Shown: positions 1,383 to 60,439, numbered from the stretch's first letter. The stretch is DNA of 64,000 bases from IMGVR_UViG_3300035182_002586:434001-498000; one strand, 5' to 3'. The notes: a model not told the origin generated them from the sequence alone. Numbers and translations are program-made.

Positions 1383-2183
1383 GTGATCACGTCGTGTCTC
1401 GCTACTGCCGGGTATGCCGCCAAGTTGCCCGCGCTCAAGGACCGCACGTTCACGTTCGGTCCCGGCCTCATCATTCTCTTCGGGCAGAACGGCTCGGGGA
1501 AGTCGACGTTACTGTCCATTCTCGCGAGCTACTCGGGGTGCTGGGAAGCTGGATGGACAGCGTTCTCTTCCAACTATGTGGGCTTCAACGACGCCCCGTT
1601 CCCGCACAGGCTCGCTACCCGTGGGAACCAAGCAGAGGTCGCGTGGGACGGCACCCCGAGCTTCTACAGCACGGGGCCCGAGTCCGGGCAGTCGGGGTTC
1701 AACAACGCCCTCGAAGACGGTGGTGAGGACGCGGACAACTACCTCCGGAGCCTCCTGGCTCCTGGTTCGGCAGGCCAAGGCCAGATCCAGTGGCTCAATC
1801 AGATGGAGAAGAAGCTCTCCGCGCCTCCGGATCTTCTCCGGGAAGACGGGACTCTACGCATACGTGGTCACGGTGAGGTCGAGAGGTCGAGCGTCAATAG
1901 CCTGTGGGGGGAGGCCATCGACGGCTTCCAGTCACACATCCGGTCGCTGCCCCACACGGGACCCGTGACGGTCCTTCTCGACGAACCCGACGCACACATG
2001 TCGCTGCCGAACCAGCACACCCTCTGGACGAAGGCCATCCCGCGCCTCTCCGTTGGGCGACAGGTCATCGTCGCCACGCACAGCGCATTCGCCCTATGCG
2101 CCCCGGACGCGACCATCATCGACCTCCAGCCGGGGTACGAGGATCGGTGCCGGAAGGTTCTTCGGGCTCTTCGCGAAGTCTGA
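1383..2183 (+). CDS. ABC/AAA-family ATPase (AAA_21-like)
   Basis: Walker A GQNGSGKST, Walker B VLLDEPD, H-loop IVATHS. Confidence 0.85.
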   Translation: MITSCLATAGYAAKLPALKDRTFTFGPGLIILFGQNGSGKSTLLSILASYSGCWEAGWTAFSSNYVGFNDAPFPHRLATRGNQAEVAWDGTPSFYSTGPESGQSGFNNALEDGGEDADNYLRSLLAPGSAGQGQIQWLNQMEKKLSAPPDLLREDGTLRIRGHGEVERSSVNSLWGEAIDGFQSHIRSLPHTGPVTVLLDEPDAHMSLPNQHTLWTKAIPRLSVGRQVIVATHSAFALCAPDATIIDLQPGYEDRCRKVLRALREV

Positions 2184-2210
2184 TGGATCGCTCCCCGCCT
2201 CGCATTGTAG
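2182..2210 (+). promoter_or_regulatory. class A promoter GATGGATC-N17-GTAG
   Basis: 7 nt to ATG 2218; overlaps upstream TGA stop. Confidence 0.8.
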
Positions 2211-2217
2211 GAGGGAC

Positions 2218-2565
2218 ATGGACACCAACACCACCCCCGCCGCCCCCGCTCTCGTCCGCTACCCCACCGACGGCCACACGCGTCCGCTGACGGTCGAGGA
2301 CATCACGGTCGGGCTCGTGACCCGTTACGTCATGTCCGACGGCGCGGTCGATCACTTCTCCGATTCCGTCATCACGAGCGTGGAGAAGAACGAGCACGGC
2401 CTGCTCTGCAAGATCGCTCGCCCCTACCTGCGGGTGACGCCGGACGGCACGCCGGTCGTGAGCTTCGAGAGTTACGAGGCGTACGCGCACCGACTCATCG
2501 AGCGCCACGTCGTGGTGATGTACTCGACGGGCAAGCCCGTGATCAACCTCGCGACGGAGAGCTGA
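2218..2565 (+). CDS. hypothetical protein
   Basis: ORF directly behind class A motif. Confidence 0.75.
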   Translation: MDTNTTPAAPALVRYPTDGHTRPLTVEDITVGLVTRYVMSDGAVDHFSDSVITSVEKNEHGLLCKIARPYLRVTPDGTPVVSFESYEAYAHRLIERHVVVMYSTGKPVINLATES

Positions 2566-2567
2566 AC

Positions 2568-2795
2568 ATGGCGAACACCCAAGTCGTTCGCGCACACCGC
2601 CTCGTCTTCGCGGTGCGTGACTGGAAGAACAACGGCGCCCTCGTCCCGCTTCGGACCCCGGGCCGCGAACCCTGGCCCGCTACGTGGGTCCGACGGGTCC
2701 CCGCCCTCTACGCGCTACACTCGGCCAACCAGTCGAGCCCCGGACGGTTCGCGCTGGTCACCCTGGACCTCGACAAACCCTACGCCGACGCATGA
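2568..2795 (+). CDS. hypothetical protein
   Basis: 75 aa ORF, tight packing. Confidence 0.7.
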   Translation: MANTQVVRAHRLVFAVRDWKNNGALVPLRTPGREPWPATWVRRVPALYALHSANQSSPGRFALVTLDLDKPYADA

Positions 2796-2796
2796 G

Positions 2797-3063
2797 ATGT
2801 CCTCTGCCCCTCCGCCCCCTCCAGTGTTCCACGCGATCTTCCCGGTCGCTGGAGCACTTCTCCAAGGGCATACCCTCCGTGTAAAGTCCCCTCCCTCCGA
2901 GGACGGGGGACCCTCAAAGGAAGTCGTGGCGGGGGAGGGCAAGGTCATCAACTGGTGCGGACAGATGATGCTCGAAGACGAAGACGCCTTCGAAACAGCT
3001 TGGCTCTTCATCGCGCTCGTAGGAACCGACGCCGCACTCCAGTCCGTCGAGGATGCCACCTAG
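2797..3063 (+). CDS. hypothetical protein
   Basis: ATG 1 nt after upstream stop. Confidence 0.65.
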   Translation: MSSAPPPPPVFHAIFPVAGALLQGHTLRVKSPPSEDGGPSKEVVAGEGKVINWCGQMMLEDEDAFETAWLFIALVGTDAALQSVEDAT

Positions 3064-3377
3064 TGAGGAGGCAGCGCGCGCCAAAGCACGACGACGCGCT
3101 TCATCACGTAGCCGGGGACAACACGGTCGGCCAGCACCACATCGGCCCCGTGCTCGAACAGATCGATCCAAGACTCGAACGCAATCGCCATGCGCCCCAA
3201 GTCGTGGCGTATCTCGTCCGCGTTCGCCGCAGTCATGACTTCCATCAGCTTGGCGAACAGCTCGGCGCGCAACAACACCCCGTGCTCATACGCCTCGAAG
3301 AGCTGCTTGGGTGTTCGTGTTTCCGCCACGACTGGGGGTTCGTAGAAGATGATCCTTGACCCCTGCTGCTGAGCCAT
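3060..3377 (-). CDS. hypothetical protein
   Basis: ATG abuts upstream TAG. Confidence 0.6.
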   Translation of the reverse strand: MAQQQGSRIIFYEPPVVAETRTPKQLFEAYEHGVLLRAELFAKLMEVMTAANADEIRHDLGRMAIAFESWIDLFEHGADVVLADRVVPGYVMKRVVVLWRALPPH

Positions 3378-3378
3378 C

Positions 3379-4016: not shown

Positions 4017-4032
4017 CTACACCACGGTGTAG
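4017..4032. promoter_or_regulatory. divergent class B pair TACACC-N2-GGTGTA
   Basis: 11 nt to ATG 4005 (-) and 8 nt to ATG 4041 (+). Confidence 0.7.
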
Positions 4033-4040
4033 GATGGAAC

Positions 4041-4886
4041 ATGACCCGTCTTGCTTGGGCCACCGACACGCATCTCGACCGCATGAACATGAAGCGGTTC
4101 CCGAGAGAGTTCGGCGCCAAGATCGCTGCGGACACCTCGGCGGAAGTCCTGCTCATCACCGGGGACATTGCCGAAGCGTCCACCTTCTCGAAGGCGCTCA
4201 TCGGCGTCTCGGAAGGGTTTGGGGGGCCCGTCTACTTCGTCCTCGGCAACCACGACGTGTGGGGGCAGAGCTTCGTGGACGCGCACCACAAGGCCGCGCG
4301 TCTGACGAGGAAGTACGAACGACTCACCTGGCTCACGGATGCAGGGGTCACCCTCCTGTCCGAGACGACCGCCCTCGTGGGGTTCGACGGTTGGTACGAC
4401 GCCAAGTGGGGTCCCACCAACCCCCCGAAGACACGCATGGGGGACTGGTCCAGGATCAAGGACTTCCAGCGCACTTGGAACCTGATGGCCATGACCTTCG
4501 AGGCGAGGGTCGACTTGATCATCCATCAGTGCCAGGAGAGGTGCGGCCTCATCGTGCAGTGGATCGAGAGGGACCTCCGGGCCGCGCTTGCCGTGCGGCC
4601 AAAGGTGGTGGTCGCCACGCACGTGCCGCCCTACCCGCAGAACGCCATCGAGCACATCGAGGGCAGGTCCGAAGAGGAAGACCGGTCCTGGCTCCCCTGG
4701 TACACGAACAAGGCGCTCGGGGACATGCTCCTGCGGGTCGCGGACGAGCACCCGGACCGGGAGATCCTCGTGCTCTGCGGACATGCACACGCCGAGCACA
4801 ACCACGAGGTTCTACCCAACCTGCGCGTCCGAACGGGGAAGGCCACGTACGGCGCGCCCTCGCTCGCCGGGGTGCTCGATTTGTGA
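4041..4886 (+). CDS. calcineurin-like metallophosphoesterase
   Basis: DTH, GDIAE, GNHD, THVPP, CGHAH motifs. Confidence 0.9.
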   Translation: MTRLAWATDTHLDRMNMKRFPREFGAKIAADTSAEVLLITGDIAEASTFSKALIGVSEGFGGPVYFVLGNHDVWGQSFVDAHHKAARLTRKYERLTWLTDAGVTLLSETTALVGFDGWYDAKWGPTNPPKTRMGDWSRIKDFQRTWNLMAMTFEARVDLIIHQCQERCGLIVQWIERDLRAALAVRPKVVVATHVPPYPQNAIEHIEGRSEEEDRSWLPWYTNKALGDMLLRVADEHPDREILVLCGHAHAEHNHEVLPNLRVRTGKATYGAPSLAGVLDL

Positions 4887-4913
4887 TGGATCGGAGAAGG
4901 GACCGCACGGTAG
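4885..4913 (+). promoter_or_regulatory. class A promoter (N17)
   Basis: 7 nt to ATG 4921; overlaps upstream TGA. Confidence 0.8.
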
Positions 4914-4920
4914 TAGGGAC

Positions 4921-5190
4921 ATGAGCCGCTCCCGCCTGATCCCGGTCACCGTCAACTTCGTCACCGACAACGGCTATTGGACCCCGAGCGAGTGGCGTAC
5001 GCGTTCGACCCGTCAGGGTGGCTACAGCCACGGCAAGCCGACCCTGGAGAACCTCCAGAAGTACGTCGCAGATGCCGAAGCGGCGACGCAGCCCGGAGGC
5101 GTGAACGCCCACCTCGGTCCGACCAAGATCCTCAAGGCGTGGATCATCGACCAGCGCTCGGGCGAGAAGCTCGTGGAGTACACGGCATGA
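4921..5190 (+). CDS. hypothetical protein
   Basis: ORF behind class A motif. Confidence 0.75.
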   Translation: MSRSRLIPVTVNFVTDNGYWTPSEWRTRSTRQGGYSHGKPTLENLQKYVADAEAATQPGGVNAHLGPTKILKAWIIDQRSGEKLVEYTA

Positions 5191-8622: not shown

Positions 8623-9378
8623 ATGCGCAAAATTGCCAACACCCACGAGCTGACCGCTGAGCTGGCACGCATCTCTGCTTACGCGGGTACTCCGAACCCG
8701 TCACGGCAGGTGCTCGCAGCGGATCTCCGGGTGCTCGCGAGCCGCCTGGAAGAGCGGACCATCGAGGCTGCTCTTCCAGGGCAGGACCCCCTCAAGAACG
8801 CCGACATGCTGAAAAGGCTGTTGGGTTCGATGAAGGTCATGCAGATGTCCATCGAACACGTCGAGGGACAGGCCAAGCACATTCTCGCAGAAATGGCGAA
8901 GGCCATCCCCTTGATCGCGGACCCCGTGTTCAAGGGCGAGGCGGAAAAGCTGTTCACCAAGGGCGCACACGCTCCGCTGCTCATGTTCGCGAACCACAGC
9001 GCGTCACCCCTCTACAAGCTCCTCTCGGACGCTGCAACCCTCGGCTTCAAAGCCAAGGACGACCCGGGCATCGGGGCGCTCCGGCAACTCCACTCCAAGC
9101 TCCTGGACGGGACCTCGCACCTGGGTAAGGCGGTAGGCTCCGTCGGGGCTGAGGCAATGGACGTACTCGGCCACATCTACAACTGGCCCGACACGCACCC
9201 CGAGGCGAAGGCCCACATGGCGCCCCTGTTCGCCGCCATCAACAAGATCTCGTCGCTGTCCCCGTACAAGGCCCCGAAGGGCTCGGGGCTGCTTGCACCC
9301 GCCCCCGTCATCCACGGCGCGATGCACGCGGTCGAAACCCTCATCGGGATGTTCGAACAGGCCGCCAAAGCGGTGTGA
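8623..9378 (+). CDS. hypothetical helical protein
   Basis: 251 aa ORF, GAGG SD. Confidence 0.75.
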   Translation: MRKIANTHELTAELARISAYAGTPNPSRQVLAADLRVLASRLEERTIEAALPGQDPLKNADMLKRLLGSMKVMQMSIEHVEGQAKHILAEMAKAIPLIADPVFKGEAEKLFTKGAHAPLLMFANHSASPLYKLLSDAATLGFKAKDDPGIGALRQLHSKLLDGTSHLGKAVGSVGAEAMDVLGHIYNWPDTHPEAKAHMAPLFAAINKISSLSPYKAPKGSGLLAPAPVIHGAMHAVETLIGMFEQAAKAV

Positions 9379-9405
9379 TGGATCGCCCGCGTGTCCCCGT
9401 TGTAG
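9377..9405 (+). promoter_or_regulatory. class A promoter (N17)
   Basis: 8 nt to ATG 9414; overlaps upstream TGA. Confidence 0.8.
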
Positions 9406-9413
9406 ATAGGATC

Positions 9414-9956
9414 ATGCCCGCTCAAAGCATTCGCTACGAGATCCACGACTGCACGGTCCGCTTCCACGCCCTGGAGTACCAGGCGCAACGTCAAGCTGCG
9501 GCGCAACAGCGGTTCCACGGCGGCACGTGGCGGCCCGCGCAGGTCGAGGGCTACCAAGGGTGGCTCGCGGTGGACGACCAGGGACACGCCTCCGACTGGT
9601 CGGGCAACGTTCCTTCCCACATCGTGGCGCAGCTCAAGATTCCTGCCCGCAAAGTAGACGGAGAAGACATGCTTCTGAGCCTCGGTTACGGCATGATCGC
9701 GGCCGGTACGACGGCCTACGCGATGAAGAACACGCTCGGCCCCATGGTCATCGGCCTCTGTCGAAGAGGCAACCTCACGCTTAGCAACGTCCTGGTGACG
9801 TCGGTGGCTGCCGTCCCCCTCAGCGCGCTCTGCGTACTTGCGGGCGCGCTCTGGCCCGTGTACCTGCCGTACATCGGCTACAACGCGTGGAAGTACCCCA
9901 ACTGGAAACCCTACGTCCCCGGCAATCCTCTACCCGACACTCAGGAGGGCTCGTGA
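9414..9956 (+). CDS. hypothetical protein with hydrophobic C-half (possible two-gene fusion)
   Basis: internal SD+ATG at 9669. Confidence 0.65.
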   Translation: MPAQSIRYEIHDCTVRFHALEYQAQRQAAAQQRFHGGTWRPAQVEGYQGWLAVDDQGHASDWSGNVPSHIVAQLKIPARKVDGEDMLLSLGYGMIAAGTTAYAMKNTLGPMVIGLCRRGNLTLSNVLVTSVAAVPLSALCVLAGALWPVYLPYIGYNAWKYPNWKPYVPGNPLPDTQEGS

Positions 9957-13197: not shown

Positions 13198-13374
13198 CTA
13201 CGCTTGGTCCCGCGAAGCCTTGAAGGCTTCGAATCGAGCACGTGCGGCCTTCCGAGCACGTCGCAAGCGCATGTGCTCACGCCATGCGTTCAGGGGGTTC
13301 TTGACCTGCCACCAGCGGAACGCGACTTCGGACCGTACGAGGTTCCACCACGAGGTGAGGGCTCTGTGTTCCAT
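13198..13374 (-). CDS. small basic hypothetical protein (58 aa)
   Basis: minus-strand class A motif 7 nt upstream. Confidence 0.6.
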   Translation of the reverse strand: MEHRALTSWWNLVRSEVAFRWWQVKNPLNAWREHMRLRRARKAARARFEAFKASRDQA

Positions 13375-13381
13375 GTCTTCA

Positions 13382-13409
13382 CTACACCGCGATGAGAATT
13401 CGATCCATT
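13382..13409 (-). promoter_or_regulatory. class A promoter AATGGATC-N16-GTAG
   Basis: 7 nt to ATG 13374; back-to-back with 13423 copy. Confidence 0.75.
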
Positions 13410-13422: not shown

Positions 13423-13451
13423 GATGGATCGATCCGGGGGTCGCGCGGTAG
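13423..13451 (+). promoter_or_regulatory. class A promoter (N17)
   Basis: 7 nt to ATG 13459. Confidence 0.8.
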
Positions 13452-13458
13452 TAGGGAC

Positions 13459-13896
13459 ATGAACACCAACTACGCCGCCCCCGTCGACACTTTCCGCCAG
13501 GACGCCGGGGTTCCGGTCGCGGAGTGGGAGAAGCTCCTCATGGTGTGGACGCTCCGTAGCCTCAACCCGGCGGCGGACAAGTTCACCACCCTCTCGTTCG
13601 CCATCCAGCAGGACGGGGAGACCTTCCGCGTGGTGGAGCGTGTCGACGGCATGTGCACGTCGACCGCCAACGGCGACTTCACGCTCTCGCAGACCTTCGA
13701 GGGGGCGGACGCCAAGAGCAAGGCGCTGTCCTACTTCATGGAGCAGATCCGCTGCGCGACCCCTCCGTGCCGCCAGGGCGCGCTGCCCGGGCTCGTCGAA
13801 GCTGCGGCGAACTTCGTGGAGACGTACGCCTACTTCGGCGGTTACGGCGGGTCGCCCTGCAACCAGAGCCACGTCCGGGTGGGCGGCTGGAACTGA
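13459..13896 (+). CDS. hypothetical protein
   Basis: ORF behind class A motif. Confidence 0.75.
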   Translation: MNTNYAAPVDTFRQDAGVPVAEWEKLLMVWTLRSLNPAADKFTTLSFAIQQDGETFRVVERVDGMCTSTANGDFTLSQTFEGADAKSKALSYFMEQIRCATPPCRQGALPGLVEAAANFVETYAYFGGYGGSPCNQSHVRVGGWN

Positions 13897-15181: not shown

Positions 15182-15210
15182 GATGGATCGGACCCACTGA
15201 CACGATGTAG
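15182..15210 (+). promoter_or_regulatory. class A promoter (N17)
   Basis: 7 nt to ATG 15218. Confidence 0.8.
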
Positions 15211-15217
15211 AGGGGGC

Positions 15218-15526
15218 ATGCACCCGATCGACGCCATGCTCATCCGGTCAGGCTTCGCGCCCGTTGGGGACGGCGACCGGTTCATCCGCGTGACCGATGA
15301 CGGTGTTCGCATCATCGTGGCGAGCGGAGTCGTGGCCGGCGAGCCCGTCCGAGACACCGCCGTCGTCCGCGTGGAGCGCGTGCGCCCGGGTTGGACGGAG
15401 ACGTGCTTCCGCCGTACCGTCTCGGTCGGTTCGGCCAGCGACAACCAGATCACGTCACTCCTGAACCTGATGCGCTACGCCTGGCAGTTTGCCCGCGCGG
15501 TGGCGAAGAAGGACCACCATGTCTGA
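15218..15526 (+). CDS. hypothetical protein
   Basis: ORF behind class A motif. Confidence 0.7.
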   Translation: MHPIDAMLIRSGFAPVGDGDRFIRVTDDGVRIIVASGVVAGEPVRDTAVVRVERVRPGWTETCFRRTVSVGSASDNQITSLLNLMRYAWQFARAVAKKDHHV

Positions 15527-17272: not shown

Positions 17273-17292
17273 GTACACCGCGTCTGGTGTAC
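17273..17292. promoter_or_regulatory. divergent class B pair TACACC-N6-GGTGTA
   Basis: 13 nt to ATG 17259 (-), 9 nt to ATG 17302 (+). Confidence 0.7.
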
Positions 17293-17301
17293 CCCAGAGG
17301 T

Positions 17302-17883
17302 ATGCCTCCGAAGAAGATCACGCTCCCCGAAGACGCGACGCTCCAGGCCGCACGAGATGCCGTCGAGTTCGGAAGAACTGGCCGCGAGGGGGTGATCTGC
17401 CCCTGCTGCGATCAGCAGGCTACGATGTACCGGCGCAAGGTCACCGCAGCCATGGCGAAGGTACTCCTGGCGCTCTACTGCCGGGATCTGACGGCACCCG
17501 GCGCTTGGGTTCGCATCCCGTCTCTTCTCAGCACGATGAAGGGGGCCGACGGCCAGGGAGGCGATTGGGGGAAACTCGCCCACTGGGACCTCGTAGAGAA
17601 GGGCACTGGGAAGCGTGAGGACGGCAGTAGCCGCACGGGCTACGCCCGAATCACGTCCTTCGGTCGGAAGTTCGCAGCACGGGGTGCCCGGATCCTACAG
17701 ATCGCACACGTCTTCAACGACAAGTGCTTCGGTTACGACGGACCCCTCGTCACCATCGACGACTGCCTCGGGAAAGAAAACGCCTTCCTGTACAACGAGA
17801 TCCTCTCGGGCGTCAGCATCCCAGAAGAGGACACCCGGGAGGAGCCGACCGAAGAGGCGAAGTTCTTCGAGTCCCTCATCTGA
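17302..17883 (+). CDS. conserved-looking phage protein (CPCC motif, probable winged helix)
   Basis: G..CPCC.Q...YRRK, GDWGKLAHW, YARITSFG. Confidence 0.75.
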   Translation: MPPKKITLPEDATLQAARDAVEFGRTGREGVICPCCDQQATMYRRKVTAAMAKVLLALYCRDLTAPGAWVRIPSLLSTMKGADGQGGDWGKLAHWDLVEKGTGKREDGSSRTGYARITSFGRKFAARGARILQIAHVFNDKCFGYDGPLVTIDDCLGKENAFLYNEILSGVSIPEEDTREEPTEEAKFFESLI

Positions 17884-23069: not shown

Positions 23070-23076
23070 TAGAGAC

Positions 23077-39123: not shown

Positions 39124-39132
39124 GCCCCTCAC

Positions 39133-43114: not shown

Positions 43115-43121
43115 GGTGTAG
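43115..43121 (+). promoter_or_regulatory. class B element GGTGTAG
   Basis: 9 nt to ATG 43131. Confidence 0.6.
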
Positions 43122-43130
43122 ATCGTGGGC

Positions 43131-43817: not shown

Positions 43818-43822
43818 GGTAG
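43794..43822 (+). promoter_or_regulatory. class A promoter (N17)
   Basis: 7 nt to ATG 43830. Confidence 0.8.
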
Positions 43823-43829
43823 TAGGGGC

Positions 43830-44078
43830 ATGAGCAGCACGCCCCTCCCCGAAGTCGGCCAGAAGATCGCCTACTGCATCGGCAGCGATCGCTACGCGGT
43901 CACGATCAAGGACGTTCAGCGCGGGGGCCAGACGGTCATCGTCGAGCTGCGTCAGGGCCGCAACGTCCACGAGTACGAGTGCACCAAGGGCCGCGACGGC
44001 GTGTACCGGGAGAAGGGTCACCGTATCGGGATGCTCGACTTCACGCGCAGCGACGGCCACCTGTCGCGGGAGTTCTGA
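43830..44078 (+). CDS. conserved-looking phage protein
   Basis: PEVG....GSDRYAVTI..V ...YLSREF-like end. Confidence 0.75.
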   Translation: MSSTPLPEVGQKIAYCIGSDRYAVTIKDVQRGGQTVIVELRQGRNVHEYECTKGRDGVYREKGHRIGMLDFTRSDGHLSREF

Positions 44079-45436: not shown

Positions 45437-45790
45437 GTGTCGTTCGAGGATACCCTCACGGACGACAACCCACTGGCCGACGAGACCATCAGCGAGGGTG
45501 AGCTGGAGGTCTACCTGTCCGTGTTCCTCGGCGATCTGTTGACCAAGCTGGACCCCCGCGAGCGAAACGTCGTCGACCGTAGGTTCACGGACAACCCCGA
45601 AACACTCGAAGAGATCGCCAACAGCTTCGGCCTGTCGCGGGAGCGCGTCCGTCAGATCGAGGAGCGCTGCCTGAACAAGATCAGGGACGCCATGGCGAAA
45701 GGCGGCCACTTGGGCGTCCCGGGGACCTGGCGCATCGGCCTCGACGACTGGCCCGTGGTCATGGACAAGATGACACTGGTGGGGGAGTGA
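45437..45790 (+). CDS. stand-alone sigma70 region 3.2-4 (HTH) protein
   Basis: LDPRERNVVDRRF...TLEEIANSFGLSRERVRQIE..CL.KIR. Confidence 0.85.
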   Translation: MSFEDTLTDDNPLADETISEGELEVYLSVFLGDLLTKLDPRERNVVDRRFTDNPETLEEIANSFGLSRERVRQIEERCLNKIRDAMAKGGHLGVPGTWRIGLDDWPVVMDKMTLVGE

Positions 45791-45816
45791 TGGATCGAGC
45801 CATCACCGCCTTGTAG
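45789..45816 (+). promoter_or_regulatory. class A promoter (N16)
   Basis: 7 nt to ATG 45824; overlaps upstream TGA. Confidence 0.8.
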
Positions 45817-45823
45817 TAGACTC

Positions 45824-46123
45824 ATGACGAAGAAATACGTTGGATACTTCGCGCACCTCTCCGACCTGCCGGTCAAGCGCGGTCAGACGGTGACGATCCC
45901 CAAGGGGACTGTGATCCACACGACCGGACCCACGAAGAAGCGGATCGCGAAGCGCACCTACAAGATCAAGGTGCACAGCGTCGGCTGTGGCCAGAACCAC
46001 CCCGAAGGTCACCCCGACCACATCGGTGGCTACTCCGTGCGCAACCCCGACGTCACGTGGGTCGGCGAGGGCGGCTACTGGTTCTCGGTGGACATCAACG
46101 ACGTCCCCGAGGCGAACGCCTGA
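45824..46123 (+). CDS. hypothetical protein
   Basis: W.G.GGYW motif; behind class A. Confidence 0.75.
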   Translation: MTKKYVGYFAHLSDLPVKRGQTVTIPKGTVIHTTGPTKKRIAKRTYKIKVHSVGCGQNHPEGHPDHIGGYSVRNPDVTWVGEGGYWFSVDINDVPEANA

Positions 46124-46131: not shown

Positions 46132-46160
46132 GATGGATCGGACTCTCCCTCGCGAGGTAG
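46132..46160 (+). promoter_or_regulatory. class A promoter (N17)
   Basis: 7 nt to ATG 46168. Confidence 0.8.
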
Positions 46161-46167
46161 TAGGGTC

Positions 46168-46524
46168 ATGAGCCGCCAATACGTCCTCGAAATCCGCCGC
46201 ACGGTGTGGGTCCTTTGGGGCTACGGTCCGAGCGGCGTCGTCGAGCATGTGGAGCCCGCCTGTACCCTCATCGACGTCGGCGTCGGCGAGCCCCTGGACT
46301 TCCCCTTCGAGCTTCCCGAGACCACCGGTACGCTCCCGGCCCCGGTCGAGTACGAGCGCCGTGAGGGCCTGGCCTGGCGGTTCACGAACCGCGCGGGCAA
46401 CGACACCGGCTGGAAGCTCGTCGAGAGCGATGAAGCCGCCCTGACGGCCGCACAGGCGAAGATCGACCAGATGCCTGTCCACGCCCGCACCCACTTCCAG
46501 AACGCCCCCGTCGTTCACTCGTGA
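46168..46524 (+). CDS. hypothetical protein
   Basis: behind class A motif. Confidence 0.75.
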   Translation: MSRQYVLEIRRTVWVLWGYGPSGVVEHVEPACTLIDVGVGEPLDFPFELPETTGTLPAPVEYERREGLAWRFTNRAGNDTGWKLVESDEAALTAAQAKIDQMPVHARTHFQNAPVVHS

Positions 46525-48372: not shown

Positions 48373-48400
48373 GATGGATCGGGGCCGGGTCGCGTTGTAC
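48373..48400 (+). promoter_or_regulatory. class A promoter GATGGATC-N16-GTAC
   Basis: 7 nt to ATG 48408. Confidence 0.75.
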
Positions 48401-48407
48401 TAGGACC

Positions 48408-48599
48408 ATGACCCCGACCCTCGTTCCGGTTCCCTCGTGCGGCATGTTCGTGACGCTCGCCGACGACGGCAAGACCATCCTCTGCGCCCCGGAGAACCTC
48501 GACGGCACCCCGGACATGGACTCGCTCTGCGAGATGGACATGATCTCGGCCGAAGACAGCACGATCGCCGCCGCCAAGGCCGCCCTCGGTCTGGTGTGA
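48408..48599 (+). CDS. hypothetical protein
   Basis: behind class A motif. Confidence 0.7.
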   Translation: MTPTLVPVPSCGMFVTLADDGKTILCAPENLDGTPDMDSLCEMDMISAEDSTIAAAKAALGLV

Positions 48600-48769: not shown

Positions 48770-49627
48770 ATGCCCGCCAAGAAGTCTGAACTCAAGCCGT
48801 GGCCCGCTGATGGGTCGTACGTCCCCGCCGAGCAACTCGTCGAGGGCGTCCTCAAGCTCCTCAGGGACACGTACAAGCTCCAGCGCAAGGGCCGGACGGT
48901 CCCTCCCTACGTAGGCTACGGCCTCGGGACGAAGGACCTCGCCGGTCAGCCAAACGTCGACGAGCAGTTCCAACCGGACATGCTCGCCTACCACCGGGCG
49001 CGCGGCCGCGACATCCTGGACATCGCCGCCTACATGCTGCTGAACCTCGGCATCGAGCAAGGGCGACGGCTTGCCGCCGAAGACAGCCGAAGTGACCTCC
49101 GAGATCAAGAGCTGATCGGCTACTGCCGTGGGCTTCTCCAGGGGCTCGACACCTCCGAGTCGAAGAAGGCCAAGCTCCGCGCGGAGACCGCCAGCACCCT
49201 CGACTTCTACAAGACGCGCCGGCCGTCCCTCATGGCCGAAGATCCGACGAAGCTCAAGCCCTTCCCCGCAGGCGATGTGGTCTTGAACGCCAAGGCTCGA
49301 CAGAAGATCAAGGTCATCCGGAAGCTCTGGCAGGACCTCAGCGGCGCCAAGACGGCCGCTCTCCAGGCCGCCAAGGGTGACGACGGAGGCTCCTGCAACT
49401 TCGACGCGTGCGCTCTCAAGGGCGGTGCGGATGTCGGCCGCGCCCTCCGACTGGCGGGCCTCACGAGCCGCTCCGGCTCGGGCCGTCTGTGGCGTGGCTA
49501 CTGGCTGATCGATCCCCCCCCCCCCGTCAACGGCCAAGCCGCCGTTCGCACGCGGCAGGCCGAAGCCATGGAGAAGCACCTCAAGGCGCTCAAGTACGAG
49601 GTCACCGTCTACTACCAGGCGGACTGA
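48770..49627 (+). CDS. two-domain hypothetical protein
   Basis: C-domain DDGGSCNFD...GQ...RT.QAEAM...L....Y.V..YYQ.D. Confidence 0.8.
   Translation: MPAKKSELKPWPADGSYVPAEQLVEGVLKLLRDTYKLQRKGRTVPPYVGYGLGTKDLAGQPNVDEQFQPDMLAYHRARGRDILDIAAYMLLNLGIEQGRRLAAEDSRSDLRDQELIGYCRGLLQGLDTSESKKAKLRAETASTLDFYKTRRPSLMAEDPTKLKPFPAGDVVLNAKARQKIKVIRKLWQDLSGAKTAALQAAKGDDGGSCNFDACALKGGADVGRALRLAGLTSRSGSGRLWRGYWLIDPPPPVNGQAAVRTRQAEAMEKHLKALKYEVTVYYQAD
49514..49525 (+). repeat. poly-C12 tract inside CDS
   Basis: GAT-C12-GTC, in frame (PPPP). Confidence 0.85.
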
Positions 49628-49654
49628 TGGATCGCCGCCACCCTCACACTGTAG
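49626..49654 (+). promoter_or_regulatory. class A promoter (N17)
   Basis: 7 nt to ATG 49662; overlaps upstream TGA. Confidence 0.8.
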
Positions 49655-49661
49655 AGGGAGC

Positions 49662-49898
49662 ATGACCACGACCGACGAGAACCCCGACTTCGTGTGCTTC
49701 GGTGACGTGTGCCGCAAGCGTATCGGCATCCAGTGCCAGTACAGCCGCCACTACCTCCGAGAGCCCGGGATCGGCGAAGGCATCCGCTGGCAGGGCCGGT
49801 TCGAGGATTACCACGGGCTCACGATCCACAAGGACGACGTGGAGCTGTTCGTCGAACGCGCAATCGCGTGGCGCAGGAAGATGGGGATCATCGCATGA
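49662..49898 (+). CDS. hypothetical protein
   Basis: behind class A motif. Confidence 0.75.
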   Translation: MTTTDENPDFVCFGDVCRKRIGIQCQYSRHYLREPGIGEGIRWQGRFEDYHGLTIHKDDVELFVERAIAWRRKMGIIA

Positions 49899-51724: not shown

Positions 51725-51972
51725 CGAGGAACAGCTTCGACGTGCTATCCCGTCCCATGGGCGGGCTCAAGGTGCTGTTCGCCAAGTGCAGTGATGGGGT
51801 CGTCCACGCCTTCGGCCTGAACGGGGACAAGGTGGAGGCCACGCCTGCGTGCAACGCCGAGGTCGGGAGCAAGCGCGTCCCCGCCACCGATGCTGACCCC
51901 GCCTGCGAGAGCTGCGGGGCTGCTGCCGAAGCGTGGGCTCAAGGCGCGCCCCTCCGGATGATCCAAACCTGA
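51721..51972 (+). CDS. H-C-CxxC zinc-module protein
   Basis: VHAF...ACN...ACESC. Confidence 0.65.
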   Translation: MTRNSFDVLSRPMGGLKVLFAKCSDGVVHAFGLNGDKVEATPACNAEVGSKRVPATDADPACESCGAAAEAWAQGAPLRMIQT

Positions 51973-51999
51973 TGGATCGCCCCTAACCACACGAGGTAG
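51971..51999 (+). promoter_or_regulatory. class A promoter (N17)
   Basis: 7 nt to ATG 52007; overlaps upstream TGA. Confidence 0.8.
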
Positions 52000-52006
52000 A
52001 GGGATC

Positions 52007-52222
52007 ATGCCGACTGCCACCGTGTGCGCGAATGACCGTGGGGAACGGTACGTCGAGGCCGAGTGCAGCGGCTACACCTTCCAGTACAGGTCCGACGAGC
52101 TTCCCTCCGAAGGCACGGAGGTCGAGGTCGAGACCTACATGGGCATCGGGGACGTGTACTGCGCCGACATCACCTGGACCGACTTCGAGAGCCGCTACCA
52201 CATCACCGCGACCGGCTGGTGA
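52007..52222 (+). CDS. hypothetical protein
   Basis: behind class A motif. Confidence 0.7.
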   Translation: MPTATVCANDRGERYVEAECSGYTFQYRSDELPSEGTEVEVETYMGIGDVYCADITWTDFESRYHITATGW

Positions 52223-52473: not shown

Positions 52474-53427
52474 CTAGGACCCCTTCACCCGAAGACGGCG
52501 AATCTCCTCGATGAGCACGGGTAGATCGTCGAGAGCTTGATAGGCCGTCGCGATGTCCGCGTCGTTGTCCAGGGCGAAGCCAGGGACCCGGGCGCTGACT
52601 GCCCGCTCCGTGATGGCAGCCAGCGCTTCCTCCGAGAGCGGGACCTCCCTCGCCTTGAACCGCTCGACCTGGTAGCGACCACGAAGCTCCAGGAGGCACA
52701 TCACGAGCATCTGGCAGCGAGACCCTGTGTAGTGCTCCAGCTCGTGGATGGCATCGTCCAGCGTCTCCCACCGCTTGGGGTCCGTGATGGCTTCCGCTAG
52801 CGGACGGGGCTCCCCCTCCATCGCTCTCACGATGCGCTGCGTGCGCTCCACGACGGCCGCTGCACTCGCAGGGTCGACGACCAAGGGGTGACGAATCACC
52901 ACGGCGTCGAGGTTGGACGCACCCCCTTCGATGTCTTCGTCCCCGCACCCCGCCTCGCGCGCACGTGCGAGATCTTCCGAATCCGGCTCATAGTCGTCGG
53001 TGTCCGGATAGTCGGGGTAGTCGTAGTCGTCCCGGTCGTCCATGGGTCGAGAGTCCCCCTGACACTCTTCACATGCCGTCGCCTCCCACAGGTGCTTGGA
53101 GTAGACGCGACGCCCGGGCTTCCCGCACTGCTCGCACGTCTCGCCGCTCCGGTCGATGGCCTCCTTGACGATGGCCTGGACCTCGGGCGTGCCGCCGAAA
53201 GGTTCATCGGAGATCCTCGTGGGAACCATGTTGAGGGTGGCGTACTTCTCCTTGATGTACGTGAACGACGCCCCGAGCTTCTCCGCCTTCGCCCCGAGGT
53301 CCATCAGGATGGCTTCCCACCCCTCGTCGTGGGCGAAGTGGCAGTTGCCGTAGACCGTCGGGTACGCCGCGCGCAACCGCGCCGTCATCGTTGCAAGCTG
53401 CTTCGCGGACTCTTCGTGCGTCTTCAT
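52474..53427 (-). CDS. multi-module hypothetical protein
   Basis: N-domain GW..IL...YIKEKY.TL...S.ETCEQCG.PG...W..T.CEEC; acidic mid-segment. Confidence 0.8.
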   Translation of the reverse strand: MKTHEESAKQLATMTARLRAAYPTVYGNCHFAHDEGWEAILMDLGAKAEKLGASFTYIKEKYATLNMVPTRISDEPFGGTPEVQAIVKEAIDRSGETCEQCGKPGRRVYSKHLWEATACEECQGDSRPMDDRDDYDYPDYPDTDDYEPDSEDLARAREAGCGDEDIEGGASNLDAVVIRHPLVVDPASAAAVVERTQRIVRAMEGEPRPLAEAITDPKRWETLDDAIHELEHYTGSRCQMLVMCLLELRGRYQVERFKAREVPLSEEALAAITERAVSARVPGFALDNDADIATAYQALDDLPVLIEEIRRLRVKGS

Positions 53428-53438
53428 CGCGTAGAGGG

Positions 53439-53445
53439 CTACACC
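53439..53445 (-). promoter_or_regulatory. class B element GGTGTAG
   Basis: 11 nt to ATG 53427. Confidence 0.55.
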
Positions 53446-56239: not shown

Positions 56240-56268
56240 GATGGATCACCCCACCCCCCGCGCTGTAG
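56240..56268 (+). promoter_or_regulatory. class A promoter (N17)
   Basis: 7 nt to ATG 56276. Confidence 0.8.
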
Positions 56269-56275
56269 AGAGGAC

Positions 56276-56464
56276 ATGGGAAACGAAATCGTCTACATCA
56301 AGCTCCCCCCGCCCGAGAGCCCTCTCGGGGGGCTCACCGGCTTCACGTCCAAGGTCCTCGAACGCAAGAAGGGCCACGTCCTCGTGGACTACCCCCTCTC
56401 GTTCGGACACTGCACCCACCAGTGGGTCCCCGAAGCGTGGGTCGCCTGGACGCTCCCGAGCTGA
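56276..56464 (+). CDS. small SH3-like hypothetical protein
   Basis: behind class A motif. Confidence 0.65.
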   Translation: MGNEIVYIKLPPPESPLGGLTGFTSKVLERKKGHVLVDYPLSFGHCTHQWVPEAWVAWTLPS

Positions 56465-56721: not shown

Positions 56722-56749
56722 GATGGATCGGTTCCCCCTCGCGCTGTAG
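56722..56749 (+). promoter_or_regulatory. class A promoter (N16)
   Basis: 7 nt to ATG 56757. Confidence 0.8.
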
Positions 56750-56756
56750 AGGGGAC

Positions 56757-56993
56757 ATGACCACGACGACCGCCCCCGCCATCGACGCGATGCTCGAAGT
56801 TCTCCTGACCGCGTGGGCGCTGTCGCAGGTCAAGGGCCCGGCCCCGAAGCTGAACGTGGCCTTCCCGCCCCGCCTCCAGTCGGCCCTCCGCAAGGCCCGC
56901 AAGCTCGAATACGTAACCGTCGACGATGCCGGCGTCTACCTCGACGAACTCGGCTGCCTCTACCTCGCCGAACACGGCAACCCCCAGATCTGA
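56757..56993 (+). CDS. hypothetical protein
   Basis: behind class A motif. Confidence 0.7.
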   Translation: MTTTTAPAIDAMLEVLLTAWALSQVKGPAPKLNVAFPPRLQSALRKARKLEYVTVDDAGVYLDELGCLYLAEHGNPQI

Positions 56994-57768: not shown

Positions 57769-57797
57769 GATGGATCGGCCCGTACCTCGCGGTGTAA
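57769..57797 (+). promoter_or_regulatory. hybrid class A/B promoter GATGGATC-N14-GGTGTAA, leadered
   Basis: GAGGT SD before ATG 57832. Confidence 0.7.
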
Positions 57798-59186: not shown

Positions 59187-59189
59187 TCG

Positions 59190-59217
59190 GATGGATCGCC
59201 ACCGACTCACGCTGTAG
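59190..59217 (+). promoter_or_regulatory. class A promoter (N16)
   Basis: 7 nt to ATG 59225. Confidence 0.8.
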
Positions 59218-59224
59218 TAGGAAC

Positions 59225-59563
59225 ATGACCCCCGAAACCGCCCGCGCTGCCGTCGCCCTCTTCGTCAAGGCCGCCGAGACCCGCCTCTGCCACGAACCCG
59301 ACGAGGAGACCCGCGAGATCGAAGGCAAGAGCATGATGCGCATCAGCGCAATGCTCGTCCCGTACAACAAGGCGAAGGTCGACCGTCTCTACGTGTGGCT
59401 GACCGACGAAACCATCACGGTCCAGGTCGCCGGCCAGACCCCTTCCCCCGAAGGCGCCGAGTACGGCTTCACCTCGGTCTCGGCCAAGGCCGAGACCAAC
59501 GCCCAGTTCGACGCCGCCGGGCTCTGCCAGTTCTTCCTCGCCCTCGCCAAGGGGATGCGCTGA
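59225..59563 (+). CDS. hypothetical protein
   Basis: behind class A motif. Confidence 0.75.
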   Translation: MTPETARAAVALFVKAAETRLCHEPDEETREIEGKSMMRISAMLVPYNKAKVDRLYVWLTDETITVQVAGQTPSPEGAEYGFTSVSAKAETNAQFDAAGLCQFFLALAKGMR

Positions 59564-59883
59564 TGCCCGCCGAGATCCGCATCGTATACAAGCGCCCGGG
59601 TTGCCTCGCGGACGTGCAGTTCGTCGAGAACTCCCTCCAGGGGTTCCGCGCCCTGCTCGACGGCGGACACATCGAGTTCATCCGCCTCCGCGAGTACGGC
59701 CAGGGCATCCACGGGTACGCGGACGAGGAAGGACGCCTCAAGGACCTGCCCTACAACCTCGACGTGGACGGCGAGCCCATCGTCGGCCCCATCTTCTTCT
59801 CGAAGGGTGACGGCGAAGGGGAAGACATCGGCTTCGAGGATGTCGAGGAAGCGTTCGCCCTCTGCCGCTTCCTCAACGCCTGA
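59563..59883 (+). CDS. DUF3846 domain protein
   Basis: NSLQGFRALLDGG.IE...DEEGRLK.LP.N...IVGPIFF. Confidence 0.8.
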   Translation: MPAEIRIVYKRPGCLADVQFVENSLQGFRALLDGGHIEFIRLREYGQGIHGYADEEGRLKDLPYNLDVDGEPIVGPIFFSKGDGEGEDIGFEDVEEAFALCRFLNA

Positions 59884-59910
59884 TGGATCGCTCCGTCCCT
59901 CATGCTGTAG
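59882..59910 (+). promoter_or_regulatory. class A promoter (N17), leadered
   Basis: overlaps upstream TGA; AGGAGGT SD before GTG 59939. Confidence 0.75.
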
Positions 59911-59938
59911 AGGAAGGGGATAAACCAGGAGGTGTGCT

Positions 59939-60412
59939 GTGGGAGGAAAAACCGTAGGAGACTGGGGCCAGGCACACAGCCGAGCACGCAACGCGCGAGA
60001 GTCCAACGACACCAAGGTCGAAGCCGCCCTTCGGGAGAAACGGGACGCCGAACGCTCCGTTGCTCTGATGCACATCAAGTGGATCCTCGAATCCCCCTAC
60101 GTGACCGATCCGGCGTGGGTCATCAGGATTCGTACGAACCTCTTGGAGAACCCAACCCTGGTACCAGCCCGGAGGGAGCAAGTCGCCCTCGAACGCCTCT
60201 TGTTTTCGTTGCACCTCCGGGATTTGAACGGAGGCGAGAGCAAGCCGCGTTCCCCCGAAGAGGTCGAAGCTGCTAGGGCGAAACGCCGCGCTCTCGTCGC
60301 TGCCGTGCAAGAGAGGGGCAAGTTTCGAGAGAAGATCAATCAAGCCGCCTTCCGCCCACAAGGGGAGCCACCGCCCAAACCACCCCGCAAAGTCTCTGTG
60401 GGTGACTACTGA
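59939..60412 (+). CDS. hypothetical basic protein
   Basis: 157 aa, lower GC. Confidence 0.65.
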   Translation: MGGKTVGDWGQAHSRARNARESNDTKVEAALREKRDAERSVALMHIKWILESPYVTDPAWVIRIRTNLLENPTLVPARREQVALERLLFSLHLRDLNGGESKPRSPEEVEAARAKRRALVAAVQERGKFREKINQAAFRPQGEPPPKPPRKVSVGDY

Positions 60413-60439
60413 CGGATCGCACCACCCCCAGCAGTGTTA
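60411..60439 (+). promoter_or_regulatory. degenerate class A copy GACGGATC-N17-GTTA
   Basis: overlaps upstream stop; GAGGAG SD before ATG 60459. Confidence 0.4.

What the first reader, a model, noticed from the sequence alone, without database searches (positions are those of the whole stretch)
2182..60439. Dispersed bipartite element GATGGATC-N16/17-GTAG with an almost invariant 7 nt to ATG: probable ECF-sigma-like leaderless promoter class
Seen: 25 copies (starts 2182, 4885, 9377, 13409(-), 13423, 15182, 21321, 23041, 23538, 31554, 32637, 34256, 36138, 43794, 45789, 46132, 48373, 49626, 51971, 56240, 56722, 57769, 59190, 59882, 60411). The spacer is always 16 or 17 nt with variable sequence. 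In 19 copies the ATG is exactly 7 nt after the GTAG/GTAC box and in one it is 8 nt. The other five have a longer leader with a Shine-Dalgarno site. Established: this geometry puts the boxes at about -35 and -10 if +1 is the A of ATG, and short GGAAC/TGAAAC-N16/17-GTT/CGTA-type boxes are typical of ECF (group 4) sigma promoters. Inference: one dedicated sigma, phage-encoded or host ECF, drives a leaderless regulon of small genes. The motif also fixes many start codons missed by the ORF track.
Basis: partly seen in the sequence, partly recalled or inferred. Interest (0 to 1): 0.85.

Follow-up and report, generated by a model that had tools for sequence, protein, structure and literature searches.

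The report
Leaderless two-box promoters of a megaphage
A 36-base two-box signal sits in front of dozens of small genes of an uncultured 620-kb soil phage, placed so that transcription should start on the A of the ATG. It is a real, evolutionarily conserved phage promoter class, one of two in this genome, but nothing found here ties it to an ECF sigma factor.

Summary
The window has 25 copies of GATGGATC-N16/17-GTAG: 19 have ATG exactly 7 nt later, one has it 8 nt later, and five have Shine-Dalgarno leaders. The 8-mer occurs 22 times against 2.4 expected.

The window is part of a 620-kb uncultured phage contig. A related soil phage (about 75% nucleotide identity) keeps both boxes and the N7-ATG while the spacer diverges. 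A more distant phage has the same frame with a different upstream box, GTTGATTC-N16-GTA-N7-ATG, including in front of orthologous genes.

It is as abundant as the first and occurs in three further phage lineages.

Best reading: sigma-type promoters that give leaderless mRNAs, read by a factor specific to this phage lineage. The ECF label is not supported. No complete sigma gene was found in the 30% of the genome I could read. There is only a stand-alone sigma region 3.2-4 protein. Its nearest relatives are unclassified sigma2+sigma4 proteins encoded by the other phages that carry these promoters.

The transcription start sites and the recognising factor remain untested.

The parts
2182..2220 (+). 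class 1 promoter, spacer 17, N7; ATG opens ORF 2218-2565 (115 aa); the stop of the upstream gene overlaps the box
4885..4923 (+). class 1, spacer 17, N7; ORF 4921-5190 (89 aa)
9377..9416 (+). class 1, spacer 17, the single N8 copy; ORF 9414-9956 (180 aa)
13372..13409 (-). class 1 variant AATGGATC, spacer 16, N7, with the class 2-type CGGTGTAG extension; weak 58-aa ORF 13198-13374; divergent from the 13423 copy
13423..13461 (+). class 1, spacer 17, N7; ORF 13459-13896 (145 aa); box is part of the palindrome GGATCGATCC
15182..15220 (+). class 1, spacer 17, N7; ORF 15218-15526 (102 aa)
21321..21349 (+). class 1 boxes with a longer leader; GGGAG 8 nt before ATG 21369
23041..23079 (+). class 1, spacer 17, N7; short 43-aa ORF 23077-23208 with low coding score; abuts a minus-strand GGTGTAC at 23034-23040
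23538..23575 (+). class 1, spacer 16, N7; ORF 23573-23872 (99 aa); the ortholog in L183 also has a class 1 promoter, but with box GTTGATTC
31554..31591 (+). class 1, spacer 16, N7; ORF 31589-32236 (215 aa); back to back with minus-strand class 2 at 31501-31519
32637..32665 (+). variant GATGGGTC, spacer 17, GTAG, long leader with GGAG before the start
34256..34293 (+). class 1, spacer 16, N7; ORF 34291-34527 (78 aa)
36138..36175 (+). class 1, spacer 16, N7; ORF 36173-36832 (219 aa)
43794..43832 (+). class 1, spacer 17, N7; ORF 43830-44078; heads the five-gene run that ends with the sigma4-only gene
45437..45790 (+). 117-aa stand-alone sigma-70 region 3.2-4 protein (GTG start) with no region 2; its stop overlaps the next class 1 box
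   Evidence: Pfam Sigma70_r4 E=5.6e-18; PDB RpoS/RpoH/SigA regions 3.2-4.2; same gene call by JGI
45789..45826 (+). class 1, spacer 16, N7; ORF 45824-46123 (99 aa)
46132..46170 (+). class 1, spacer 17, N7; ORF 46168-46524 (118 aa)
48373..48410 (+). class 1 with GTAC box, spacer 16, N7; ORF 48408-48599 (63 aa); gene callers started it at 48444
49626..49664 (+). class 1, spacer 17, N7; ORF 49662-49898 (78 aa)
51971..52009 (+). class 1, spacer 17, N7; ORF 52007-52222 (71 aa); the ortholog in L183 has GTTGATTC-N16-GTAT-N7-ATG
56240..56278 (+). class 1, spacer 17, N7; ORF 56276-56464 (62 aa); back to back with minus-strand class 2 at 56216-56235
56722..56759 (+). class 1, spacer 16, N7; ORF 56757-56993 (78 aa)
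57769..57797 (+). class 1 box, spacer 17, then CGGTGTAA; long leader, GAGG 7 nt before ATG 57832
59190..59227 (+). class 1, spacer 16, N7; ORF 59225-59563 (112 aa)
59882..59910 (+). class 1 boxes, long leader, AGGAGG 6 nt before GTG 59932
60411..60439 (+). weakest copy: GACGGATC, spacer 17, GTTA; GAGGAG leader to ATG 60459; could be chance
27629..27672 (.). two divergent class 2 promoters (GGTGTAC on the minus strand, GGTGTAG on the plus strand). They fill the 38-nt gap between the DUF444 gene (26522-27631, minus) and ORF 27670-28086.
26481..26500 (-). class 2, N10; opens the 684-aa SPFH-domain gene 24429-26483
4026..4043 (+). class 2, N8; opens ORF 4041-4886 (metallophosphoesterase); overlaps a minus-strand copy at 4017-4023
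43115..43133 (+). class 2, N9; ORF 43131-43817
17273..17304 (.). divergent class 2 pair; the plus-strand copy (N9) opens ORF 17302-17883
39103..39135 (.). divergent class 2 pair; the plus-strand copy (N9) opens ORF 39133-39501
53425..53445 (-). class 2, N11; opens the 317-aa gene 52474-53427
63296..63315 (-). class 2, N10; opens the 232-aa gene 62600-63298. The remaining class 2 sites (first G of GGTGTA): plus strand 13899, 14781, 18856, 19999, 20293, 22097, 32909, 39481, 50092, 50538, 54936, 63594; minus strand 11424, 11714, 28437, 29113, 30774, 31519, 53984, 56235, 62243.

Best explanation
The element is a promoter. An 8-bp upstream box (GATGGATC, -36/-35 to -29/-28) and a downstream element (C-17, C-15, R-14, K-12, then GTAG at -11..-8) are recognised together by RNA polymerase carrying a sigma-type specificity factor. 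One domain binds the upstream box across a flexible 16/17-nt spacer, and another binds and opens the GTA core. Transcription starts 8 nt after the GTAG, on the A of the ATG, so the mRNA has no leader and is translated without a Shine-Dalgarno site. The same GTA core, strengthened to CGGTGTA(C/G), works without any upstream box in a second class, as an extended -10 does for sigma-70. The recognising factor is specific to this phage lineage rather than the host's primary sigma. The best candidate is the phage-borne sigma2+sigma4 protein family found next to the same promoters in related phages; in this phage only a sigma3.2-4 piece has been seen so far. Shown here: the anatomy, the enrichment, the position at gene starts and the evolutionary conservation. 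Inferred: that it is transcriptional, where +1 lies, and who reads it. My estimates for the sub-claims: promoter 0.85; leaderless start at the ATG 0.75; reader is a phage-encoded sigma-70-family protein 0.4.
For: Enrichment and orientation. The 8-mer occurs 22 times against 2.4 expected, always in the direction of the downstream gene. An exact-pattern scan of IMG/VR found 38 copies on this contig and never more than one on any other contig. About 54 copies lie in the parts of this genome that were read.

Placement. The copies fill 33-36-nt gaps between genes, and the upstream TGA stop often overlaps the box. Of 20 short-spacing ATGs, 18 open ORFs with good coding scores.

Bipartite behaviour. 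The spacer varies in sequence and by one base in length, while the boxes are invariant.

Phylogenetic footprint. Six contigs of a relative in soil metagenome Ga0070717 (74-78% nucleotide identity in shared genes) carry 14 copies with the same boxes and the N7-ATG. Orthologous promoters differ in spacer sequence and length.

Same frame in a distant phage. L183 (GC 56%) has 15 copies of GTTGATTC-N16-GTA(C/A/T), eight of them with N7-ATG. Two of these sit in front of orthologs of window genes 23573 and 52007.

Leaderless reading. In 48 of 48 short-spacing copies the start is ATG, against 69% ATG among other genes. The purine run after GTAG lies 1-4 nt from the ATG, whereas real Shine-Dalgarno sites in this genome peak at 5-9 nt. 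C at -1 occurs in 40/42, against 30/48 in SD-led genes.

Not an RNA structure. The mean folding z-score is +0.4 over 42 copies.

Not the host's primary sigma. There are no sigma-70 consensus promoters in 43-62 kb, and the GTAG core lacks the T at the last hexamer position.

Second class. CGGTGTAS occurs 29 times against 3.1 expected, and about 62 sites are followed 8-11 nt later by an ORF-opening ATG. The same motif lies before genes in L182, L183 and L268, each of which encodes a member of the sigma2+sigma4 family.
Against: No transcript data exist, so +1 is inferred from geometry alone. With +1 on the A, the GTA core sits at -10/-9 in class 1 but at about -12/-11 in class 2 (N9-10). One reader would therefore have to tolerate a 2-3 nt difference in distance to the start. 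No complete sigma gene was found in the 30% of the genome that was read. The sigma4-only protein has the recognition helix SRERVRQIE of primary-type sigmas, which predicts a TTGACA-like box rather than GATGGATC. The relatives' sigmas have the same helix although their box differs, so no simple protein-DNA covariation explains the box switch. One phage with a family member, L267, lacks these motifs. In L183 the sigma gene itself is preceded by a class 1 promoter, so something else must read class 1 first unless sigma is delivered with the virion. C at -1 is common in this genome anyway (62%).
Confidence: 0.6

Rival explanations
1. The upstream box is not read by a sigma domain but by a separate phage activator bound at about -30, as with the MotA box of T4 middle promoters. 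The GTA core is read by whatever reads class 2. Class 1 would then be class 2 plus an activator site, possibly marking a different time class.
For: Class 2 works with the core alone. Class 1 has a weaker version of the extended core (C-15, R-14, N, K-12 against CGGT). The box differs between related phages while the core is constant. The box is asymmetric and always in one orientation.
Against: No MotA- or AsiA-like family appeared among the 235 proteins scanned. Class 1 also differs downstream, with a fixed N7 and a G-rich discriminator, which an upstream activator does not explain. The 16/17 spacing equals classical sigma -35/-10 spacing.
Confidence: 0.2
2. A host alternative sigma factor (ECF or SigB/SigF-like) is hijacked. 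The motif is a host stress-regulon promoter copied by the phage.
For: The geometry (short boxes, 16/17 spacer, core about 8-11 nt before +1) fits alternative sigmas. From my own knowledge, not tested here, the SigB/SigF-type -10 GGGTAY resembles GGTGTAC. No complete phage sigma was found in 30% of the genome.
Against: The box changes between related phages (GATGGATC against GTTGATTC) in front of orthologous genes, which is easier with a phage-borne reader. Host ECF sigmas are normally held inactive by anti-sigmas. The boxes lack the AAC and CGT hallmarks. The metagenome scan found multi-copy contigs only from the relative phage. The host is unknown.
Confidence: 0.12
3. The promoters are read by a phage-encoded RNA polymerase that needs no sigma, either single-subunit or a phiKZ-like multisubunit enzyme possibly carried in the virion.
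For: Conservation is nearly continuous from -19 to +3, as in T7-type promoters. Very large phages of some groups carry their own polymerases (Iyer et al. 2021, PMC7824862). 70% of the genome was not read.
Against: The variable 16/17 spacer and a distal box are not features of known single-subunit or phiKZ/AR9 promoters. No polymerase domain appeared among the proteins scanned or annotated in 185 kb. The relatives that share these promoters encode sigma-family proteins.
Confidence: 0.08
4. The element acts on RNA or as a non-promoter DNA site: a processing site, a translation enhancer with a very short SD spacing, an operator for a repressor, or a Dam-methylation signal (the box contains GATC).
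For: There is an AGGG/AGGA run just before the ATG. The box contains GATC, and the phage encodes a D12-class adenine methyltransferase. The copies lie inside co-directional gene runs without terminators.
Against: There is no folding signal. The purine run is 1-4 nt from the ATG, too close for this genome's SD spacing. The relatives' box GTTGATTC has no GATC. The box is not palindromic. GATC is not avoided in the window (461 against about 342 expected). The bipartite layout with a spacer of free sequence is typical of promoters.
Confidence: 0.05

Closest known systems
ECF (group 4) sigma promoters, e.g. GGAAC-N16/17-CGT(T/C) (my own knowledge)
   Same: Two short boxes, a 16-17 nt spacer of free sequence, and a downstream box centred near -10.
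   Different: The boxes lack the AAC and CGT signatures. No ECF sigma or anti-sigma pair was found. The sigma-like proteins linked to these promoters hit PF04545 (region 4 of groups 1-3) and pass only the generic TIGR02937 model.
Sigma-70 -35/-10 promoters and extended -10 promoters
   Same: There is a trade-off between a distal box and a strengthened proximal element: class 1 has a box plus a weak extension, class 2 has no box and a strong CGGT extension. The relatives' box GTTGATTC contains TTGA, as in TTGACA.
   Different: The core is GTA(G/C), not TANNNT. In class 1 it lies 2 nt closer to +1 than a -10 hexamer would. No TGn motif is present.
-10 elements adjacent to ORFs that give leaderless mRNAs in Deinococcus-Thermus (PMC12340547) and the leaderless middle/late genes of Thermus phage phiYS40 (Sevostyanova et al. 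2007; listed as a reference in that paper, content from my own knowledge)
   Same: The promoter abuts the start codon at a fixed distance, there is no SD site, and many genes in one genome are affected.
   Different: Those use the host's TANNNT element. Here the core and the box are phage-lineage specific, and there are two classes.
Phage T4 middle (MotA box plus -10) and late (gp55/gp33, -10-like element only) promoters (my own knowledge; gp33 and AsiA in jumbo phages, PMC7824862)
   Same: Phage-specific promoter classes are built on one polymerase. One class has a distal factor site, the other has a single proximal element.
   Different: No MotA, AsiA, gp55 or gp33 homologs were detected. 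T4 transcripts have leaders.
'Minimal' single-HTH sigma factors of group 2 jumbo phages (Iyer et al. 2021, PMC7824862) and the two-subunit sigma SigO-RsoA of Bacillus subtilis (my own knowledge)
   Same: The window encodes a sigma piece with only the flap-binding, -35-reading domain (45437-45790).
   Different: Here the piece is clearly the C-terminal third of a sigma2+sigma4 family whose other members are full length. No partner with region 2 was found.

Membership tests
ECF sigma-dependent promoter | -35 element with the conserved AAC core (GGAAC-like) | tested here: not met
   The box is GATGGATC (GGATC at best); the position weight matrix of 42 copies shows no AAC.
ECF sigma-dependent promoter | -10 element with a CGT core | tested here: not met
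   The core is (T/G)GTAG; the base before GTA is G, and before that T or G, never C.
ECF sigma-dependent promoter | A cognate ECF sigma gene (regions 2 and 4 only, usually with an anti-sigma and autoregulated) in the same genome | tested here: inconclusive
   None among the 235 proteins scanned or in the JGI annotation of 48 kb walked, but only about 30% of the 620 kb was read. Relatives encode sigma2+sigma4 proteins that pass only the generic TIGR02937 model.
Sigma-type bipartite promoter (general) | Two conserved boxes, a spacer constrained in length (plus or minus 1) but not in sequence, fixed orientation, upstream of genes | tested here: met
   Spacer 17 in 28 copies and 16 in 14 copies, with near-zero information inside the spacer. 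All copies point toward the downstream gene. Orthologous copies differ in their spacers.
Sigma-type bipartite promoter (general) | Transcription starts a fixed distance downstream and depends on both boxes | not testable with these tools
   Needs 5'-end mapping and mutagenesis.
Leaderless mRNA genes | The start codon is at the 5' end of the transcript; no SD site at working distance; strong preference for AUG | tested here: inconclusive
   The sequence features are met: 48/48 ATG, the purine run is only 1-4 nt from the ATG against 5-9 nt for real SD sites, and the distance is a fixed 7 nt. The 5' end itself is not measured.
Host primary-sigma (TTGACA/TATAAT or TANNNT) promoter | -10 hexamer with T at the first and last positions and A at the second, 6-8 nt before +1 | tested here: not met
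   No consensus sites in 43-62 kb. After the TA of GTAG there is no conserved T, and the hexamer would end at -5.
T4-type sigma appropriation (MotA/AsiA) | MotA- and AsiA-like proteins encoded by the phage | tested here: inconclusive
   Not among the Pfam or PHROG families hit by the 119 window proteins, nor among the Pfam families hit by the 116 proteins from other loci. The genome was only 30% read, and such proteins are small and divergent.

The most novel reading that the evidence does not exclude
The phage uses a sigma factor in pieces. The stand-alone region 3.2-4 protein (45437-45790) docks on the beta flap and reads the lineage-specific box GATGGATC. A separate, still unfound protein reads and melts the CGGTGTA/GTAG core. 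Class 2 genes would then need only the core reader and class 1 genes both pieces. That would give a two-tier, almost wholly leaderless transcription programme whose upstream-box specificity was switched (GTTGATTC to GATGGATC) genome-wide in this lineage.
Probability: 0.12. Interest if true: 0.8.

Novelty: new variant of a known kind. Interest (0 to 1): 0.55.

Why it matters
If the start sites are confirmed, about 40% of the genes in the window of this 620-kb phage would be translated from leaderless mRNAs made at two very compact promoter types, some of them as divergent pairs inside 38-nt gaps. That gives a simple sequence rule for correcting gene starts and operon maps in a whole group of uncultured high-GC phages. 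It also predicts a cognate specificity factor that can be searched for and tested in vitro. The change of upstream box between related phages, with core and spacing kept, is a natural experiment in promoter-factor co-evolution. Short, strong, orthogonal promoter/sigma pairs of this kind are also useful parts for high-GC expression systems.

Tried and rejected
1. Megablast of 12 kb against isolated phages found no match. Protein searches gave only distant hits to huge uncultured phages and Thermus phages.

2. I looked for region 2 of the split-looking sigma. The four upstream genes have no Pfam hit even at E up to 1. tblastn with 16 full-length relatives found only the region 4 gene. The 273-aa neighbour has no informative Atlas match. 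I therefore rejected a gene cut in two by an inserted endonuclease.

4. Walking 48 kb of the contig with the look-up of encoding contigs found translation and nucleotide-metabolism genes but no sigma or polymerase. I stopped because each step adds only 10 kb.

5. RNA structure was rejected. An SD function of the purine run was rejected on spacing. A methylation signal is unlikely because the relatives' box has no GATC.

6. C at -1 as evidence for the start site is weaker than it looks, because 62% of SD-led genes also have C there.

7. Host assignment is only a weak hint: DUF444 is nearest to Planctomycetota and Myxococcota, and PurA is 56% identical to a deltaproteobacterial MAG.

8. Literature searches for the motif or for leaderless promoters in huge phages found nothing specific. 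The DNA of the contig that encodes P0025 is not held.

Full report
**What is there**

The 8-mer GATGGATC occurs 22 times in the window, always on the + strand, against 2.4 expected from shuffles. Each is followed after 16 or 17 nt by GTAG (once each GTAC, GTAA and GTTA). Nineteen have ATG exactly 7 nt later, one (9377) has it 8 nt later, and five have leaders with GGAG-type sites 6-8 nt before the start.

Eighteen of the 20 short-spacing ATGs open ORFs with clearly positive codon-usage scores. Most coincide with starts picked by a motif-blind caller and by the JGI annotation. The weak ones are 13409(-) and 23041. Site 60411 departs from the consensus twice and may be chance.

A position matrix from 42 copies in this genome shows more conservation than was reported:
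- C at -17 is invariant, and C at -15 is present in 36/42.
- R is found at -14 and K at -12.
- The -6 to -3 stretch is G-rich, and C at -1 is present in 40/42.
- The rest of the spacer carries no information.

**Where the window comes from**

An exact-pattern scan of IMG/VR returned 38 copies on one contig, IMGVR_UViG_3300035182_002586, and never more than one on any other contig. The window is positions 434,001-498,000 of that record. The record is itself bases 90,622-619,578 of a 620,031-base JGI contig, Ga0373636_0000001.

GC content is 64%. No isolated phage is similar at the DNA level. Gene content is that of a very large phage. It includes DUF444, SPFH, radical SAM, RNA ligase and NADAR. 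It also includes EF-Ts, an RNase II-type nuclease, an RF-1 domain, endonuclease VII, PurA, topoisomerase IB, a D12 methyltransferase and HU.

Copies are about ten times denser in the last 108 kb of the IMG/VR record than in the rest (28 of the 38).

**Is it functional?**

A metagenome scan found six short contigs from one soil sample (Ga0070717) with 14 copies. Their genes are 74-78% identical in DNA to genes of this phage, so they come from a relative. In orthologous promoters the two boxes and the N7-ATG are unchanged, while the spacer differs in sequence and even in length. The pairs are L072:1297 against L052:2989, and L075:653 against L052:8131.

The element shows no RNA folding signal (mean z +0.4). 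The purine run before the ATG lies 1-4 nt from it, whereas Shine-Dalgarno sites of other genes peak at 5-9 nt. All 48 short-spacing copies use ATG, against 69% of other genes.

There are no sigma-70 consensus promoters and no excess of terminators in 43-62 kb. In many cases the upstream gene's TGA overlaps the box. These are therefore internal promoters in a very compact genome.

**A second class**

Upstream regions of genes without the motif are strongly enriched for CGGTGTA(C/G): 29 in the window against 3.1 expected. About 62 such sites in the 148 kb examined are followed 8-11 nt later (mode 9-10) by an ATG that opens a good ORF. They lie on both strands and have no conserved upstream box.

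Thirty of these sites are in the window. They include back-to-back divergent pairs inside gaps of about 40 nt, for example 27629-27672.

Class 1 carries a degenerate form of the same extension (C-15, R-14, N, K-12). Sites 13409(-) and 57769 have both the box and the full extension. This is the familiar trade-off between a distal box and an extended proximal element. Together the two classes precede about 43% of the window's genes.

**Who reads it?**

Pfam, PHROG and JGI annotations of about 185 kb (30% of the genome) show no complete sigma and no polymerase.

The window does encode a 117-aa protein (45437-45790) that is only sigma region 3.2 plus region 4:
- Its Pfam Sigma70_r4 hit has E = 5.6e-18.
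- Its best solved relatives are RpoS, RpoH and SigA.
- Its recognition helix is SRERVRQIE.

Its nearest relatives in 1.8 billion representatives are 36-46% identical. They form a family of 250-500-aa proteins with regions 2 and 4 and no region 3, and they pass only the generic TIGR02937 model.

These relatives sit on phage-like contigs, one of them 484 kb long. Three of those four contigs carry the same promoter architecture:
- **L183 (GC 56%):** 15 copies of GTTGATTC-N16-GTA(C/A/T), eight with N7-ATG, plus CGGTGTAA-N9-ATG sites.
- **L182 (GC 65%):** four GTTGATTC-N16 sites, three followed by GTAT and one by GTCT, all with SD-type leaders, and six CGGTGTAN sites 8-10 nt before ATG or GTG.
- **L268 (GC 64%):** 13 CGGTGTA(A/C/G)-N8/9-ATG sites in 12 kb.
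- **L267:** lacks these motifs.

Window genes 23573 and 52007 have orthologs in L183 (44% and 51% identity). These orthologs also carry class 1 promoters, but with the other box. The two boxes occupy the same frame and share G.TG..TC.

**Interpretation**

The promoter reading and the leaderless geometry are well supported by sequence and by comparison, but they are not measured. The architecture belongs to a phage lineage, and the upstream box has been switched within it. This favours a phage-borne reader.

The ECF label fails its two sequence criteria, and the associated proteins are not curated ECF members.

Several weak points remain:
- The core-to-start distance is 7 nt in class 1 but 9-10 nt in class 2.
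- The same recognition helix occurs in sigmas of phages with different boxes.
- In L183 a class 1 promoter precedes the sigma gene itself.
- 70% of the genome was not read.

Iyer et al. (PMC7824862) describe minimal single-HTH sigmas in jumbo phages, which is the nearest precedent for the 117-aa protein. -10 elements that abut ORFs and give leaderless mRNAs are documented for Deinococcus-Thermus (PMC12340547).

**Verdict**

It is of moderate to good interest, mainly because it defines a testable two-class leaderless promoter system across uncultured very large phages.

Noticed in passing
window, 30 sites listed in 'parts' (e.g. 27629-27672, 26481-26500, 43115-43133); also L182, L183, L268: A second promoter-like class, CGGTGTA(C/G) followed 8-11 nt later by ATG, with no upstream box. 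It is as frequent as the reported motif and is shared by at least three other phage lineages.
   Followed up: yes
window 45437-45790 (+): A stand-alone sigma-70 region 3.2-4 protein (117 aa, GTG start) with no region 2 anywhere nearby. Its nearest relatives are full-length sigma2+sigma4 proteins of other large phages.
   Followed up: partly
whole window; JGI contig Ga0373636_0000001: The window belongs to a 620,031-base contig. IMG/VR holds only bases 90,622-619,578. The trimmed 90 kb still looks phage-like where it was read (endonuclease VII, EF-Ts, RNase II-type nuclease, RF-1 domain, PurA, NUDIX, protein kinase).
   Followed up: partly
window 13423-13440, 23041-23058, 36138-36155; L052 near 4451 and 3640 (minus strand): In several class 1 copies the box runs into gatcc, making the perfect 10-bp palindrome GGATCGATCC with two GATC sites. 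The phage encodes a D12-class adenine methyltransferase (L179:1-715). GATC is somewhat over-represented in the window (461 against about 342).
   Followed up: partly
window 24429-31518 (minus strand): A block of larger minus-strand genes (684-aa SPFH-domain protein, DUF444/YeaH-like protein and others) is driven only by class 2 sites. DUF444 is nearest to Planctomycetota and Myxococcota clusters, a weak hint about the host.
   Followed up: partly
L183: 7393, 5926 and 10059 (minus strand); window 48408: Automatic gene calls start several genes at a downstream ATG. The N7 rule moves the start upstream, by 12 nt at L183:7393 and by 36 nt at window 48408.
   Followed up: partly
L267 (contig Ga0642625_14092): A phage with a more distant member of the same sigma family lacks both motif classes. 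Instead it repeats AAGCCTTGACAT-like and GGAAAACTCC 8-mers about 10 times in 21 kb, possibly its own promoter or operator set.
   Followed up: no
L183: 10117-10165 (+), inside the called sigma gene 10001-11065: A class 1 promoter (GTTGATTC-N16-GTAC) with a 15-nt G-rich leader lies 116 nt inside the called ORF, just before the Met where similarity to the sigma family begins. The sigma gene is probably shorter than called and is itself under a class 1 promoter.
   Followed up: partly
window 1383-2183, 4041-4886, 35118-36128: Other recognisable genes in the window are an AAA/ABC-type ATPase, a calcineurin-like phosphoesterase and a radical SAM enzyme. One window protein each also matches RNA ligase, NADAR, DUF1003, DUF1653 and an aminoacyl-tRNA synthetase anticodon-binding domain.
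   Followed up: no
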